Source: Prasinococcaceae sp. CCMP 1430 (lineage: Eukaryota; Plantae; Prasinodermophyta). From it: DNA of 64,000 nucleotides. A model generated the notes under the pieces. That model ran no database searches. It had not been told where the DNA came from and saw only the letters and a program-made list of their open reading frames with translations. Where the stretch lies: the NCBI GenBank assembly GCA_013416795.1, contig RQSC01000028.1, forward strand, positions 462,483 through 526,482. The letters run 5' to 3'. The position numbers and the translations under genes were made by a program. This document shows positions 56,591 to 60,502 of the stretch, one piece after another (within the stretch, counting starts at the first letter, position 1; every line of letters starts with the position of its first letter).

Positions 56591-59500
56591 ATGGCGAGCA
56601 GCAGCGACGAGAGTGATATGATCGACATCATGTCCTCCGACTCTGACGCGTCCGATTCAGACAAGGACGACTCCGACTTCGTGGTCACCGAGGCGATCGA
56701 GGCGACAGCGGCAGCCCCCGAGAGCGAGGAGGCCGCCGCGCCCCAGGCTCCCGTCGCGGAGCACGTCGCTGGCGGCACGGGCGCCTCCGCCGCGGAGCTA
56801 GTGGGCTCGGACGGGGGCGGCTCGGACGGCAGCTCCCACAGCGATGAAGCAGAGTACGAGGTCGAGGCGATCCTCGCGGTGCGCAAGCGCGGGCGCACGT
56901 CCCAGTACTTGGTGAAGTGGCAAGGCTACGGCGATGAGGACAATACCTGGGAGCCCGAACAGCACCTCGCCGGCTCCCAGGACTTGCTCGATGCGTTCCT
57001 CGCCGAAAGGGAGGCCAAAGAAGCCGAGGCGCTCGCCCGCCGGCAAGCTGCTAACGCGCAGCTGCGCGGCGCGGGCGCCGACGGCGGTGGCATCTACACG
57101 TCCCCCGACGGCAAGCGGTACAGCGCGCGAGAGCGCAGGAGCGTCATCCGTCTGAGCTACGACACAGACGAGGAGGGGGCGGAGCGCAGGAAGCGCCGCA
57201 AGAAAACGTCGAAGAAGAAGGCCAAAAAGGCAGGGCCCACCAAGAGGAAGGCTGGCGGCGGCAACGGAGTCGCCGGGCCCTCCAGGCCGGTGCGCGTGGT
57301 CGACGCCGCGGCCGAGAAGGAGTCCAATTTCAACAACGCTGACATCGAGCTCTGGAGCGAGTGTTTCGATGCGCCGCAGTGGGACGTCGCCAAGGTGACC
57401 AAGCTGGGCGTGCTCGAGCTCTTCGCGGGGTGCGGTGGCCTGAGCATGGGCGGTTCCATCAAGTTCGCGGTGAATGGCACACGAACCGTCGATCTTAGCA
57501 TCGACACCGTGGGCGCCGTCGAGATCGAGCCGGTGCCCGCACGAACGTTCAAGCTCAACTACCCGCACGCCAACGTCATCGTGATGGGCGTCGGGCGCTT
57601 CGTGGCCACTACGCGGCGCTTCGTGCACCTGCTGAAGGACTGTCGCGCCGTTGTCGACGCCAGCGATGAGGGCGAGGGCGCTGGTGCCGCCAGCGGGCGC
57701 ACCGTGGTGGGCATGCGGATCAATCAGGCGATCGCGTCGGAGAAGGTGATCGTGACCAACGCCAAGGGCTGGCGCAACACTTCGGGCACGGGCTCACAGT
57801 CCAGGCAGCTCATGGACTACGTGACCGTCGAGGAGGCTGGAGGCACGGTTGCCCTGGGGTGGGTGGAGTGGTGCGTGCAGGCCGAGGGTTCCCAGTCGGA
57901 GGGTCAGTGGATGAGCGACAGATCTATGTGCGAGCAGAACCTGCAGCGGCAGGCGGGCGCCTACGTGGCGCGCGACGACTTCAGCCCAGGCGTTTGGCCC
58001 ATGCCTGGCGACGTGCACATCATTGCGGGCGGCCCGCCGTGCCAGGGTTTCTCGGGCTACAACTCGCAGCGCACTCTGTCGCAGGCGGTATCGGAGGTCC
58101 TCTCCGATCCCGAGAACCGCTTGCTGGCGCGATTCATGGAGGCAGTGTGGCTGTACCGCCCGCTGTACCTCATCATGGAGGAAGTGCCGAACGTGGCAGA
58201 CAAGAGGGACGTGATGGACTTCCTTTGCAAGTCGCTAGCGGTCCATGGATACAACTACGATTGGAGGAAACAGACCAAGACTGGCCTCTACGGCGTGCCG
58301 CAGTCCCGCAACCGCCTCATCCTGCTTGGCGCGCTCAAGCAGCTCGACATGCCCGAGCCCCCGAAGCCCGTCGTGAGCTCCTTAAAGTGGGACCAAGACG
58401 CCATCACCGACGCCATGCGCGCGAGCCAGCGGGCGCACTTCCTGGACAACATCATCCGCGAGGAGGAGCCGCCTGAGGGGGGAGCGGCTGCCTGCGACGG
58501 CGAACACTACACCCAGGAGAGGGCCGACGAGGAGCGCGAGGCCCTGAGGGAGCGCAGGGAGGAGATGCTGGAGGTGCTCGGGCCGGAGCCCACCAAGGAT
58601 GCCAGCGACAATGAGGAGAACGAGGACACGAACCCCAGGATGGAGGTCGACGCCCCCGCGCCACCCACGGATGCTGCCGCCCGCACGCTACGCAGACGCG
58701 ACGCGGGGCCATCGCTGGCGAAACGCACGCTCGAGTGGAAGAGGGCCAAGGAGGCCATCGAGAGGGAGTACCTGGCGGGCGAGGCCGCGGTGAGGCGCAA
58801 GCTCAGAGCGAAGGGCAAGGCGCAGTCGGCGAGCGCGCGCAGCGAGGCGCAGCTAGACAAGGTGCGGCGGGCGCAGCTGCACCCCAAGCTGCGCGCGCGC
58901 GCGCTCGTGATCGGCGACGCCTTCACGCCGGACCTGCCGCGCCTCGCCACCGAGGTGAAGGACACTCAGGAGCAGGCCGTTTTGGAGGCCCCCTCCGATG
59001 CGGGCGTGAGCTACGAGTGCAAGTCGCCGACGCCGTACGTGGCGTACCTGCGCCAGACCATGGAGGCGGGGCAGAAGGTCACCAACCACGTGGTGTACGA
59101 CCTCGGAATCTCCGACCGACTGCGCGTGCAGGCGGTGCCGCTCTGGGGAGGCGCGTGCTGGCGCGACATGCTGGGCCACGACGGCACGATGAATTATCCC
59201 AAGATGATGGTGCTTAACGACGACCAATGGGCGCGGCTGGGCTCGCGGTGGATCAACATGATCCCCGATCACATGTGGGCCGAGAGGCCCAAGAGGTTCG
59301 ACGAGCTCGACGGCCGCATGCCCAGGCTCAAGCACGGCTGGAAGCTCGAGTCGAACCGCTTCCCGATGGTCCCCTACTGGTGCGTGACAATGAAACACGG
59401 CAAGGACACGGAATGCTACGGCCGCTACGACCTCGACATGGAACACGGCACCGTGCACTCTTACCACAAGCCGCACTGGCACGTCAGCCTGGTGCCCTGG

Positions 59501-60502
59501 GACCACCGCGTGGCGAGTGTGCGGGAGAAGGCGCGCATCCAGGGCTTTCCCGACAGCTTCGTGTTCACAGGCACCGTGGCGCAGCAGTACAAGCAGCTGG
59601 GGAACGCGGTGTCGCCGCAGCTCGCCAAGGCCATCGCGCGCACTATCATGACGGCCCACGCGGGCTCGGTGGCCACCTACGCGGACGCGGGCGCCGCCGC
59701 CGCGGCGGGCGCAGACTTCGCCGAACGCGCCAGGGTCGCGGCCGAGGAGGCTGGCTGGGAACAGGGCGCTGCCGGGGATGTGCGCCCCAGCGTCAGCCTC
59801 GTGAGCACCTCCCAGGAGCTGCGGAACTTCGCCGAGTTCTGCGACACGTTCAACCCTGCCGAGGAGCTCGAGCAGGACGTGCTGCGCCACGACCCGGCGG
59901 ACGCCAAGGACCTCGCGGAGCGCCCGCAGCTCGAGAACATGACCTACGAAGAGTTCCTCGTGGCGTACAACACGCAACATCGCGACGATCACTCCGTGCG
60001 CAACAACAAGAGGAATCCCTTCGAGACCTGCCGCGAGGCGGAGGGGTACCACCCCTACCGCATCGAGCGCTTCAAGGCGCTGCGCTGGAGGAGGGACGAG
60101 TCGGGGACGCTGTCCATGGAGTGCTGCATCGAGTACAAGGACTGGCCCAACCACGAGTGGGACTGGCTGGTGAAACCGTACTTCGGGTTGAGCGCGTGGC
60201 GCGAGTTCATGCGGGACGTTGGCGAAGAGGCTTTCCTCACCTTCGAGAGGCGACAGGTCGAACACGTCGTGGCGCCGGGCCTCGACGTAGACGTCACCGA
60301 GGAGAAGCGGGTGTCGACCGTGCTCTCGGGGGCGGAAGAGAAATCGTTCGAGATGGAGGAGCGCTACAACGAGGAGATGGACAAGGGCTGGATCCCCGAC
60401 CCTGCGCGGGCCAAGAGGGGGCGTGCTAAGAAGAGGCCCGCGCCGATGGACGACGGCGACGACGGCGACGCGGAGGGTATCGCTATCGACCTCTGCGCGT
60501 GA
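56591..60502 (+). CDS. Chromodomain-containing C5 cytosine DNA methyltransferase (DNMT1/CMT-related), intronless
   Basis: Chromo EYEVEAIL...[21 protein letters not shown]. Motif I [61 protein letters not shown]. Confidence 0.93.
   Translation: [1303 protein letters not shown]

What the first reader, a model, noticed from the sequence alone, without database searches (positions are those of the whole stretch)
56591..60502. BAH-less DNA methyltransferase with chromo or chromo-like modules before, inside and after the catalytic domain
Seen: a 1303-aa intronless C5-MTase with catalytic motifs I, IV, VI, VIII, IX, X and a canonical chromodomain (about 56852-57010, aromatic cage Y..W..Y intact) placed N-terminal to motif I. 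No BAH or RFTS domain is recognisable. Established: plant chromomethylases have BAH plus one chromodomain inserted between motifs I and IV, and DNMT1/MET1 have BAH but no chromo. The motif IV context ([22 protein letters not shown]) and target-recognition region resemble CMT/DNMT1. Inference: this is a distinct histone-mark-reading methyltransferase architecture, possibly an early or parallel CMT lineage that links H3K9/K27 methylation to DNA methylation without BAH.
Basis: partly seen in the sequence, partly recalled or inferred. Interest (0 to 1): 0.82.

Follow-up and report, generated by a model that had tools for sequence, protein, structure and literature searches.

The report
BAH-less chromomethylase relative, three chromo modules
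This early-branching green alga has an intact DNA-methylating enzyme from a sister group of the plant chromomethylases; it lacks their BAH domain and carries one standard and two hidden chromo-type modules, so it may link histone marks to DNA methylation in a different way.

Summary
Window 56591-60502 (+) is one uninterrupted 1303-codon gene, PRCOL_00004409 of Prasinoderma coloniale. The published gene model starts at residue 286, so it lacks motif I and the chromodomain.

Pfam finds only a canonical N-terminal chromodomain (residues 89-137, cage Y89/W110/Y113) and a C5 DNA methylase. No BAH or RFD is detectable.

AlphaFold models plus an all-against-PDB structure search show two more chromo-fold modules:
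- One sits between motifs I and IV, where CMTs carry their chromodomain. It has no evident aromatic cage.
- One follows motif X. Its three cage positions are aromatic in 11/11 relatives.

The catalytic domain belongs to a tight clade (Prasinoderma, Pycnococcus, Mesostigma, Eutreptiella, marine metagenomes) that is sister to true CMTs (99/97 support). AU tests did not strictly reject the alternatives (p about 0.09).

Family signatures are motif VI EEV instead of ENV, and Tyr where ZMET2 has its CHG-reading R804.

Earlier papers list this gene as "CMT3/hCMTbeta", or apparently count it as DNMT1. I found no description of this architecture.

The scan had already found the paralogue (PRCOL_00002833, four chromo modules) on another piece of this genome.

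Histone reading and sequence context are inferred, not shown.

The parts
56591..60502 (+). Full coding sequence: 1303 aa plus stop, no introns. This is PRCOL_00004409 of Prasinoderma coloniale. A second possible start is M10 at 56618. The published model starts at M286 (57446).
   Evidence: EukProt model P0011 equals aa 286-1303 at 100% identity; Jiang 2024 Data S1 sequence begins [14 protein letters not shown]...; intact in Tara scaffolds.
56855..57001 (+). Canonical N-terminal chromodomain, aa 89-137, with aromatic cage Y89/W110/Y113.
   Evidence: Pfam PF00385 at 4e-17. PDB sequence hits to CDY, HP1/CBX, LHP1, Chp1 and MPP8 chromodomains at 5e-12 to 1e-7. Residue positions.
57188..57256 (+). 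Lys/Arg-rich patch, aa 200-222, which looks like a nuclear localisation signal. The flanking N-terminal region is low-complexity and leaves no room for a BAH domain.
   Evidence: Sequence read. The NLS role is an inference.
57353..57640 (+). First part of the methyltransferase N-lobe, aa 255-350, including motif I ELFAGCGG (aa 276-283).
57689..57991 (+). Internal chromo-fold module, aa 367-467, between motifs I and IV at the position of the CMT chromodomain. It has three strands plus a helix, with a loop of about 45 aa between strands 1 and 2. No canonical aromatic cage is evident.
   Evidence: AlphaFold model with pLDDT 72.5. In the VIA-align wide search the top hits are nearly all chromo or chromoshadow domains: Rhino 4u68 Z 5.8, rmsd 3.0, 55 aa; ZMET2 409-503 Z 4.1. 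hhalign against chromodomains gives probability 61%, E 8e-5. Pfam finds nothing.
57992..58390 (+). Methyltransferase motifs IV-VIII, aa 468-600. Includes catalytic Cys484 in GGPPCQGFS, motif VI as MEEVP (EEV instead of ENV) and motif VIII PQSRNRL.
   Evidence: EEV is present in 12/12 family members, against ENV in 17/17 CMTs and 38/39 others.
58391..58894 (+). Charged, low-complexity linker, aa 601-768, inserted before the target-recognition region. Its length varies from 31 to 169 aa among relatives.
58895..59680 (+). Target-recognition region and motifs IX-X, aa 769-1030. W930, Y958 and H962 align with ZMET2 Y776, R804 and H808. C931, C942, H956 and H962 are specific to the family.
   Evidence: Residue-by-residue alignment to ZMET2 7ubu_A and column counts.
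59813..60040 (+). Conserved, mostly helical segment of unknown fold, aa 1075-1150, with the invariant motif MTYEE..V.YNT..R.DHS.R.
   Evidence: No match in Pfam or PDB sequence searches.
60056..60241 (+). C-terminal chromo-fold domain, aa 1156-1217. The three cage positions, Y1156/Y1182/W1185, are aromatic in all 11 aligned relatives.
   Evidence: AlphaFold local pLDDT of 81-94 across this domain. In the VIA-align wide search 26 of the top 26 hits are chromo or chromoshadow domains or chromodomain-carrying proteins: Chd1 9n6k Z 6.8, rmsd 1.8, 56 aa; ZMET2 chromodomain 442-505 Z 4.1. hhalign gives probability 66%, E 5.7e-5. Cage columns counted.
60308..60400 (+). Conserved C-terminal helix, aa 1240-1270, with the RY..E...G motif. 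A basic tail follows.

Best explanation
The gene encodes an intact C5 DNA cytosine methyltransferase. It belongs to an old green-lineage family that is the sister group of the plant chromomethylases.

Shown here:
- All catalytic motifs are present.
- A canonical HP1-type chromodomain lies N-terminal to the catalytic domain.
- A chromo-fold module without an evident aromatic cage sits where CMTs carry their chromodomain.
- A family-wide C-terminal module contains a chromo-fold domain with a conserved aromatic triad.
- There is no BAH or RFD domain.

Inferred:
- The enzyme is brought to methyl-lysine-marked nucleosomes, most likely H3K9me-type heterochromatin. The N-terminal chromodomain and probably the C-terminal chromo-like domain do this, replacing the BAH-plus-chromo dual reader of CMT3/ZMET2.
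- The internal module has become a structural or regulatory part of the catalytic domain.
- The sequence context is probably not CMT3-like CHG, because the arginine that reads the +2 guanine in ZMET2 (R804) is a tyrosine here.
For: - Domains: Pfam finds Chromo plus DNA_methylase only. The best solved relative is ZMET2 at 1.4e-40, ahead of the DNMT1s at about 1e-29.
- Family boundary: nine full-length cluster representatives score E <= 1e-135, then scores drop to about 1e-41 and weaker. The nine include P. coloniale PRCOL_00002833 and sequences from Mesostigma and Eutreptiella; the Pycnococcus/Pseudoscourfieldia homologue P0006 came from the first search.
- Next-best hits: the four full-length ones I scanned are true CMTs with BAH plus an inserted chromodomain.
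- Trees on the catalytic domain with the insert removed: family 100/100, family+CMT 99/97, CMT 98/86, DNMT1-like 100/99.
- Independent character: the family (90-137 aa) and nearly all rows of the CMT clade (87-228 aa) have a large insert between motifs I and IV. The DNMT1-like and outgroup rows have at most 34 aa there.
- Both cryptic modules fold as three strands plus a helix. They match chromodomains almost exclusively among 48,161 PDB representatives.
- The C-terminal cage triad is aromatic in 11/11 relatives.
- N-terminal readers vary within the family: one chromodomain, two chromodomains, a Tudor domain, or none. The C-terminal module is present in all the members aligned over that region.
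- An MMETSP ORF marked 'type:complete' (P0004) carries chromodomain plus methylase on one transcript.
- Purifying selection: pN/pS about 0.19 against environmental alleles.
- P. coloniale DNA is methylated: 14% of C and 25% of CG (PMC11884799).
Against: - No binding or activity data exist for any member of the family.
- AU tests do not reject placing the family outside CMT+DNMT1 (p 0.093) or with DNMT1 (p 0.086). The family also sits on a long stem (1.4-1.65 substitutions per site).
- Structure matches have modest Z scores (4-6.8). Foldseek E-values were not significant.
- The models rest on shallow alignments of 11-13 sequences, with mean pLDDT of 68-72.
- Motif VI is EEV rather than ENV in the whole family, with unknown effect on catalysis.
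- The cage register of the internal module depends on a weak hhalign alignment.
- There is no transcript evidence for the 5' part of this particular gene.
Confidence: 0.6

Rival explanations
1. It is simply a divergent member of the chromomethylases (CMT3/hCMTbeta), as listed by Jiang et al. 2024. It would work like CMT3, with the internal chromodomain reading H3K9me2 and maintaining CHG methylation.
For: The closest solved relative is ZMET2. The tree groups it with CMTs. It has a chromo-fold insert at the CMT position. It is listed as CMT3/hCMTbeta in PMC11540031 Data S1.
Against: No BAH domain, although BAH is reported as required for ZMET2 nucleosome binding and in vivo activity (Bewick 2017, quoted). 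Pfam does not recognise the insert, and the cage positions are not aromatic. The clade lies outside the one holding all BAH+chromo CMTs, including the chlorophyte Picocystis. ZMET2 R804 is Tyr in 11/12 members. The Jiang listing used the truncated model.
Confidence: 0.1
2. It is a DNMT1-type maintenance CG methyltransferase that has lost its RFD and BAH domains, consistent with Sarre et al. 2025 scoring P. coloniale as DNMT1 = 2, CMT = 0. The chromodomains would only tune its localisation.
For: Sarre 2025 Table S1 gives P. coloniale DNMT1 = 2 and CMT = 0. CG is the main methylated context in P. coloniale. The AU test does not reject family+DNMT1 (p 0.086).
Against: Pfam finds no RFD or BAH, and the CMT-derived BAH HMM finds no BAH. 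The best tree puts it with CMTs at 99/97, and the DNMT1-like clade excludes it at 100/99. It shares the large motif I-IV insert with CMTs, not with DNMT1. P. coloniale has a DNMT5 candidate for CG maintenance (PMC11884799).
Confidence: 0.12
3. It is a catalytically weakened or inactive protein that acts mainly as a chromatin reader or scaffold through its chromo modules.
For: Motif VI is EEV instead of the near-universal ENV, and motif I starts with E instead of D, in all 12 family members. In half of the members the G of the motif X GNAV is replaced.
Against: The catalytic Cys in PCQ, the Glu of motif VI, the RxR of motif VIII, and motifs IX and X are all conserved across the family. The catalytic lobes show no amino-acid differences among environmental alleles. 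The variant residues are themselves invariant, which suggests a working variant rather than decay.
Confidence: 0.1
4. Only the N-terminal chromodomain reads histone marks. The internal and C-terminal chromo folds would be purely structural or bind something else, such as DNA, RNA or a partner protein, as chromoshadow and Chd1-type chromodomains do.
For: Top structural matches include chromoshadow domains and the Chd1 second chromodomain. Several family members have no N-terminal reader at all yet keep the C-terminal module, so that module's role could be unrelated to histone tails.
Against: All three canonical cage positions of the C-terminal domain are aromatic in 11/11 relatives, which is the hallmark of methyl-lysine readers.
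Confidence: 0.25

Closest known systems
Plant chromomethylases (CMT3 / maize ZMET2; PDB 4fsx, 7ubu)
   Same: Closest catalytic domain by sequence (1.4e-40) and sister group in the tree (99/97). Both have a large insertion with a chromo fold at the same site between motifs I and IV. ZMET2 Y776 and H808 have aromatic and His equivalents (W930, H962).
   Different: No BAH domain. The internal module is not detectable by Pfam and lacks the aromatic cage. There is an extra canonical chromodomain ahead of motif I and an extra chromo-fold domain after motif X. Motif VI is EEV rather than ENV. The CHG-reading R804 is replaced by Tyr. There is a long charged linker ahead of the target-recognition region.
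DNMT1 / MET1
   Same: Same superfamily of catalytic domain, with a long target-recognition region.
   Different: No RFD/RFTS, CXXC or BAH domains. It carries the motif I-IV insert that the DNMT1-like sequences lack (at most 34 aa in those rows). It lies outside the DNMT1-like clade (100/99).
Diatom DNMT4-type enzymes with an N-terminal chromodomain (Hoguin et al. 2023, PMC9998398)
   Same: A chromodomain N-terminal to a C5 methyltransferase, with no BAH.
   Different: The catalytic domain is unrelated at this level. The Cylindrotheca chromo-DNMT (P0009, a weak hit that I took as the diatom representative) falls outside DNMT1+CMT+family on a very long branch. It matched only the catalytic core and its chromodomain. 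The resemblance is convergent.
Neurospora DIM-2 with HP1 (PDB 9baq, 'DIM2-HP1-H3K9me3-DNA complex')
   Same: Works alike in principle: a DNMT1-superfamily methyltransferase is directed by a chromodomain that reads H3K9me3.
   Different: In DIM-2 the chromodomain belongs to a separate protein (HP1), and DIM-2 is reported to keep a BAH domain. Here the chromo modules are part of the enzyme. Only a weak sequence match to DIM-2 was found (2e-15).
Paralogue PRCOL_00002833 in the same genome (P0002; earlier scan finding s1-399949)
   Same: Same family, 65-70% identical, and sister in the tree (100/100). It has the same internal and C-terminal modules.
   Different: It has two tandem N-terminal chromodomains instead of one.

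Membership tests
Chromomethylase (CMT) | C5 methyltransferase catalytic motifs in DNMT1-like order | tested here: met
   Motifs I, IV, VI (variant EEV), VIII, IX and X were located.
Chromomethylase (CMT) | Chromodomain embedded between motifs I and IV (Bewick 2017) | tested here: inconclusive
   A predicted chromo-fold module sits at that site. However, Pfam Chromo does not match it, hhalign gives only 61%, and the cage positions are not aromatic.
Chromomethylase (CMT) | BAH domain N-terminal to the catalytic domain | tested here: not met
   Pfam finds none. An HMM built from CMT BAH domains finds none in the protein or in any family member scanned, and none in a six-frame translation of the whole window. 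The upstream neighbour is a minus-strand PP2C-kinase gene.
Chromomethylase (CMT) | Catalytic domain nests inside the CMT clade | tested here: not met
   It is sister to the CMT clade, not inside it. The CMT clade (98/86) holds all BAH+chromo sequences, including the chlorophyte Picocystis.
Chromomethylase (CMT) | Arginine that reads the +2 guanine of CHG (ZMET2 R804 / AtCMT3 R745; Jiang 2024) | tested here: not met
   Y958 aligns with R804 between the gap-free anchors T-V and P-H. The position is Tyr in 11/12 family members.
Chromomethylase (CMT) | Binding to H3K9me2 nucleosomes and CHG/CHH methylation | not testable with these tools
   This needs peptide binding assays, enzyme assays and a methylome.
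DNMT1 / MET1 | Replication-foci targeting domain (RFD/RFTS) and tandem BAH domains | tested here: not met
   No PF12047 or PF01426 hit, whereas the Brassica MET1 hit P0007 carries both.
DNMT1 / MET1 | Catalytic domain inside the DNMT1 clade | tested here: not met
   The DNMT1-like clade (100/99) excludes it. The AU test for family+DNMT1 gives p 0.086, so the alternative is disfavoured but not rejected.
Diatom DNMT4 with N-terminal chromodomain | Catalytic domain of the DNMT4/RID type | tested here: not met
   The Cylindrotheca representative P0009 branches outside DNMT1+CMT+family.
The CMT-sister family defined here (Prasinoderma, Pycnococcus, Mesostigma, Eutreptiella and metagenomic members) | Motif VI MEEVP, a cage-less insert between motifs I and IV, a C-terminal MTYEE...YNT segment, and a chromo-fold domain with an aromatic triad | tested here: met
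   All of these are present in the window protein and conserved across the members aligned. The clade has 100/100 support.

The most novel reading that the evidence does not exclude
Green plants inherited two parallel histone-guided DNA methyltransferase designs from a common ancestor that already had a chromodomain inserted in the catalytic domain. One is the BAH+chromo chromomethylases. The other is this BAH-less family, in which the inserted chromodomain lost its cage and reading moved to terminal modules: N-terminal chromo or Tudor domains, plus a universal C-terminal chromo-like domain. In Prasinoderma, which is reported to have no DNMT1 or CMT other than these two paralogues, the family would be the only link between histone marks and DNA methylation. 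It would write a non-CHG context.
Probability: 0.35. Interest if true: 0.75.

Novelty: new variant of a known kind. Interest (0 to 1): 0.6.

Why it matters
Current accounts disagree with what is seen here in three ways.
- CMTs are said to be plant-specific and to have first appeared in charophytes or streptophytes (PMC6453930; PMC12344493).
- DNMT1-superfamily paralogues are said to retain BAH even when lineage-specific (PMC12344493).
- This gene is filed as 'CMT3/hCMTbeta' in one survey, and apparently under 'DNMT1' in another, on the basis of a gene model that lacks motif I and the chromodomain.

The full-length protein shows a third design in the DNMT1/CMT superfamily. It has no BAH, a degenerate internal chromo module, and readers at both ends.

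The family occurs in Prasinodermophyta, a prasinophyte (Pycnococcus) and Mesostigma (a basal streptophyte). The motif I-IV chromo insertion, and hence the CMT stem, therefore probably predates the split of the green lineages.

The finding offers a natural experiment on how reader modules can be swapped around one catalytic core. It also offers a concrete candidate for any non-CG methylation in P. coloniale, and it corrects a gene model. It is a variant of a known theme rather than a new kind of system, and its function is untested.

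Tried and rejected
- Pfam at E <= 10 on the insert, the C-terminal region and the linker taken separately gave nothing useful.
- Profile HMMs of the insert (A3) and the C-terminal region (A4) against all PDB sequences gave only chance hits.
- Foldseek against the PDB gave no significant hit for either model (E 0.1-5). 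The hit lists were rich in chromodomains, and the VIA-align wide search was needed to see this clearly.
- A word-index search with A4 for stand-alone proteins of 138-439 aa found none. This says nothing about longer proteins.
- AU tests for two alternative placements were not decisive.
- A script comparing the cryptic modules separately with CMT-type and N-terminal-type chromodomains timed out and was not repeated.
- Expression data for the P. coloniale DNMT genes (Table S9 of PMC11884799) are not held. Huff & Zilberman 2014 could not be opened.
- A BAH exon hidden upstream was considered and rejected. There is no BAH signal in any frame of the window, and a divergent PP2C-kinase gene ends 1.1 kb upstream.
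- A transposon or viral origin was considered and rejected. The flanking genes are ordinary host genes, and the downstream neighbour is syntenic in the Tara scaffolds.
- The GC dips at 15.2-15.9 kb and 61.9-62.6 kb are runs of N (assembly gaps), not foreign DNA.

Full report
**1. The observation**

Window 56591-60499 (+) translates without a stop into 1303 residues. It lies inside a longer ORF that opens at 56423, and the first ATG is at 56591. Long ORFs are common by chance in this DNA of about 69% G+C, and one search lists many overlapping ones.

This one is a real gene:
- Pfam gives DNA_methylase at 6.7e-35 and Chromo at 4e-17.
- The protein matches solved ZMET2 at 1.4e-40 and the DNMT1s at about 1e-29.
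- The same ORF is intact on Tara Oceans metagenome scaffolds at 99.3% nucleotide identity, with 15-16 synonymous against 10 non-synonymous differences (pN/pS about 0.19).

- motifs I, IV, VI, VIII, IX and X;
- the string [22 protein letters not shown] (aa 471-492);
- a chromodomain at aa 89-137 with cage Y89/W110/Y113.

**2. Identity of the gene and genome**

The 65-70% identical relative P0002 clusters with Prasinoderma coloniale PRCOL_00002833. A EukProt protein of 1018 aa is 100% identical to residues 286-1303 of the window protein. The sequence given for 'Prasinoderma coloniale, CMT3/hCMTbeta, PRCOL_00004409-RA' in Data S1 of Jiang et al. 2024 (PMC11540031) begins with exactly those residues.

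So the window comes from P. coloniale and the gene is PRCOL_00004409. The published model starts at M286, just after motif I (ELFAGCGG, aa 276-283). It therefore lacks the AdoMet-binding motif and the whole N-terminal region, and it must be truncated.

The earlier scan finding s1-399949 (3807 nt, equal to 1268 codons plus stop) is the paralogue P0002 on another piece of the same genome.

**3. No BAH or RFD**

- Pfam finds neither domain in this protein, nor in any of the 11 other family members scanned.
- An HMM built from the BAH domains of four true CMTs recovers BAH in 52 other proteins of the set. It finds none in the family and none in a six-frame translation of the whole 64-kb window at E <= 10.
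- The region between the chromodomain and motif I (aa 138-254) is low-complexity and basic.
- The upstream neighbour is a minus-strand PP2C-plus-kinase gene ending at 55497. A hidden upstream BAH exon is therefore unlikely.

**4. The two cryptic modules**

Alignment of the relatives shows two conserved regions outside the catalytic motifs:
- the stretch between motifs I and IV (aa 345-470; invariant R405, Q406, D409, G418, L422, W424, W440, D443);
- a C-terminal region (aa 1075-1270).

Neither region matches Pfam or any PDB sequence profile. Profile-profile comparison with a chromodomain alignment gives modest but register-consistent matches: 61% (E 8e-5) for the insert and 66% (E 5.7e-5) for the C-terminal region.

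AlphaFold models built from these alignments show the following:
- Insert: mean pLDDT 72.5, with a strand, a long loop, two strands and then helices.
- C-terminal region: helices, then three strands and helices. Block pLDDT is 93, 91, 81, 90 and 94 over aa 1160-1209.

Foldseek E-values were not significant. An exhaustive structural alignment against 48,161 PDB representatives was clearer:
- For the insert, the top 12 hits and most of the top 40 are chromo or chromoshadow domains. Examples are Rhino (Z 5.8, rmsd 3.0 A, 55 residues), cpSRP43, Chp1, Chd1 and HP1. ZMET2 residues 409-503 also match, a range that includes its chromodomain and the helix before it.
- For the C-terminal model, the top 26 hits are all chromo or chromoshadow domains or chromodomain-carrying proteins. 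Examples are Chd1 (Z 6.8, rmsd 1.8 A, 56 residues), Rhino, HP1, SUV39H1 and the ZMET2 chromodomain 442-505.

The Z values are modest, as expected for domains of about 55 residues. The uniformity of the hit lists is the real evidence.

In the hhalign register, the three cage positions of the C-terminal domain are Y1156, Y1182 and W1185. They are aromatic in 11 of 11 relatives. In the insert, the first cage position is aliphatic in 12 of the 13 aligned sequences. The other two fall on variable, non-aromatic or gapped columns. That register is less certain.

**5. The family and its place**

A search of 1.84 billion cluster representatives shows a sharp boundary. Nine full-length representatives score E <= 1e-135, followed by fragments, and then scores drop to about 1e-41 and weaker.

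Named members come from P. coloniale (both paralogues), Pycnococcus provasolii and Pseudoscourfieldia marina, Mesostigma viride, and the euglenid Eutreptiella. Euglenids carry a plastid of green-algal origin (Sarre 2025). The remaining members come from marine metagenomes.

The four next-best full-length hits that I scanned with Pfam are true CMTs, with BAH plus a chromodomain between motifs I and IV. The Picocystis CMT that Bewick 2017 reported is also among the hits, and the CMT-derived HMMs find its BAH and inserted chromodomain.

Maximum-likelihood trees of the catalytic domain, with the insert removed, gave these supports (UFBoot/SH-aLRT, careful search; the quick tree agrees):

| Clade | Support |
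|---|---|
| Family | 100/100 |
| Family + CMT | 99/97 |
| CMT | 98/86 |
| DNMT1/MET1-like | 100/99 |

A Cylindrotheca chromo-DNMT (P0009) branches outside all three groups.

AU tests disfavour the two alternative placements by about 13.7 log-likelihood units. They do not reject them at 0.05 (p 0.093 and 0.086).

An independent character agrees with the tree. The family (90-137 aa) and nearly all rows of the CMT clade (87-228 aa) have a large insertion between motifs I and IV. The DNMT1-like and outgroup rows have at most 34 aa there.

**6. Family signatures**

- Motif VI is MEEVP (EEV) in 12/12 members, against ENV in 17/17 CMTs and 38/39 other sequences.
- Motif I begins with E rather than D.
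- The target-recognition region has invariant C931, C942, H956 and H962.
- In the gap-free alignment with ZMET2 chain 7ubu_A (chain index plus 129 gives the residue number, checked on Y776, R804 and H808), ZMET2 Y776, R804 and H808 correspond to W930, Y958 and H962.
Its loss explains the weak CHG activity of CMT2. It is Tyr in 11/12 family members.

N-terminal readers differ among members:
- one chromodomain: the window protein, P0003, P0004 and Mesostigma P0068;
- two chromodomains: P0002;
- a PTM/DIR17-type Tudor domain: P0070;
- none: Pycnococcus, Eutreptiella and others.

The C-terminal module is present in all the members aligned over that region.

**7. How it most likely works**

Shown: an intact catalytic core, a canonical cage-bearing chromodomain, two further chromo folds, no BAH, purifying selection, and a methylated host genome (14% of C and 25% of CG; PMC11884799).

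Inferred, by analogy with CMT3/ZMET2, where BAH and chromodomain both bind H3K9me2 (quoted):
- The N-terminal chromodomain and the cage-bearing C-terminal chromo-like domain tether the enzyme to methyl-lysine-marked nucleosomes.
- The cage-less internal module has become part of the catalytic domain's scaffold or regulation.
- With Tyr at the R804 position, a CMT3-like CHG preference is not expected.

The effect of EEV in place of ENV on catalysis is unknown.

**8. Comparison with the literature**

- Jiang 2024 lists the truncated model as CMT3/hCMTbeta and notes that key residues 'undergo notable variations' in chlorophyte algae.
- Sarre 2025 scores P. coloniale as DNMT1 = 2 and CMT = 0. It names Prasinoderma as a lineage deserving attention and states that DNMT1 paralogues retain BAH.
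- With DNMT5, DNMT6 and DNMT2 at one gene each, the Sarre counts total five. This matches the five PF00145 genes of Krasovec 2025. The two 'DNMT1' genes are therefore most likely these two paralogues; that identification is my inference.
- Hoguin 2023 describes diatom DNMT4 proteins with an N-terminal chromodomain. The Cylindrotheca chromo-DNMT that I took as their representative branches outside the DNMT1, CMT and family clades.
- I found no paper describing the BAH-less, three-chromo layout. The library does not cover subscription journals.

**9. Verdict**

This is a new variant of a known kind, and it corrects a gene model. It also repeats, for the second paralogue, what the scan reported earlier for PRCOL_00002833.

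Noticed in passing
window 52270-55497 (-): The upstream, divergently oriented neighbour is a 1075-aa ORF with a PP2C phosphatase domain (1.6e-16) followed by a protein kinase domain (3.7e-41). A first-reader note (s1-406041) calls the kinase catalytically dead. I did not check that.
   Followed up: partly
window 57446 (M286 of the gene): The public gene model PRCOL_00004409 (EukProt; Jiang 2024 Data S1) starts at M286. It therefore omits motif I and the N-terminal chromodomain. The paralogue's model PRCOL_00002833 (935 aa, P0024) is truncated in the same way, starting at the position equivalent to residue 332.
   Followed up: yes
window 15216-15910 and 61860-62605: Runs of N (695 and 746 bases) are assembly gaps. 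They explain the apparent G+C dips in the composition profile.
   Followed up: yes
window 59372-59476 (aa 928-962): The family has invariant Cys931, Cys942, His956 and His962 in the target-recognition region, where CMTs and DNMT1s have other residues. This could be a lineage-specific metal site. It was not tested.
   Followed up: no
window 60655-61713 (-); L001 4290-5339; L002 5279-6328: The downstream neighbour is a protein of about 350 aa with a weak match to the geranylgeranyl reductase catalytic domain. It is syntenic in the Tara metagenome scaffolds.
   Followed up: partly
L005/L006 1600-1902 and 2001-5324: The metagenomic relative P0003 starts in the middle of its chromodomain (MKWKGYG...). 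A 100-aa gene is called just upstream on the same strand, so its model is probably split by an intron or a calling error.
   Followed up: no
P0070 aa 11-62: One family member, from a Logan assembly, carries a PTM/DIR17-type Tudor domain (3.7e-16) at the N-terminus in place of a chromodomain. This suggests reader swapping within the family.
   Followed up: partly
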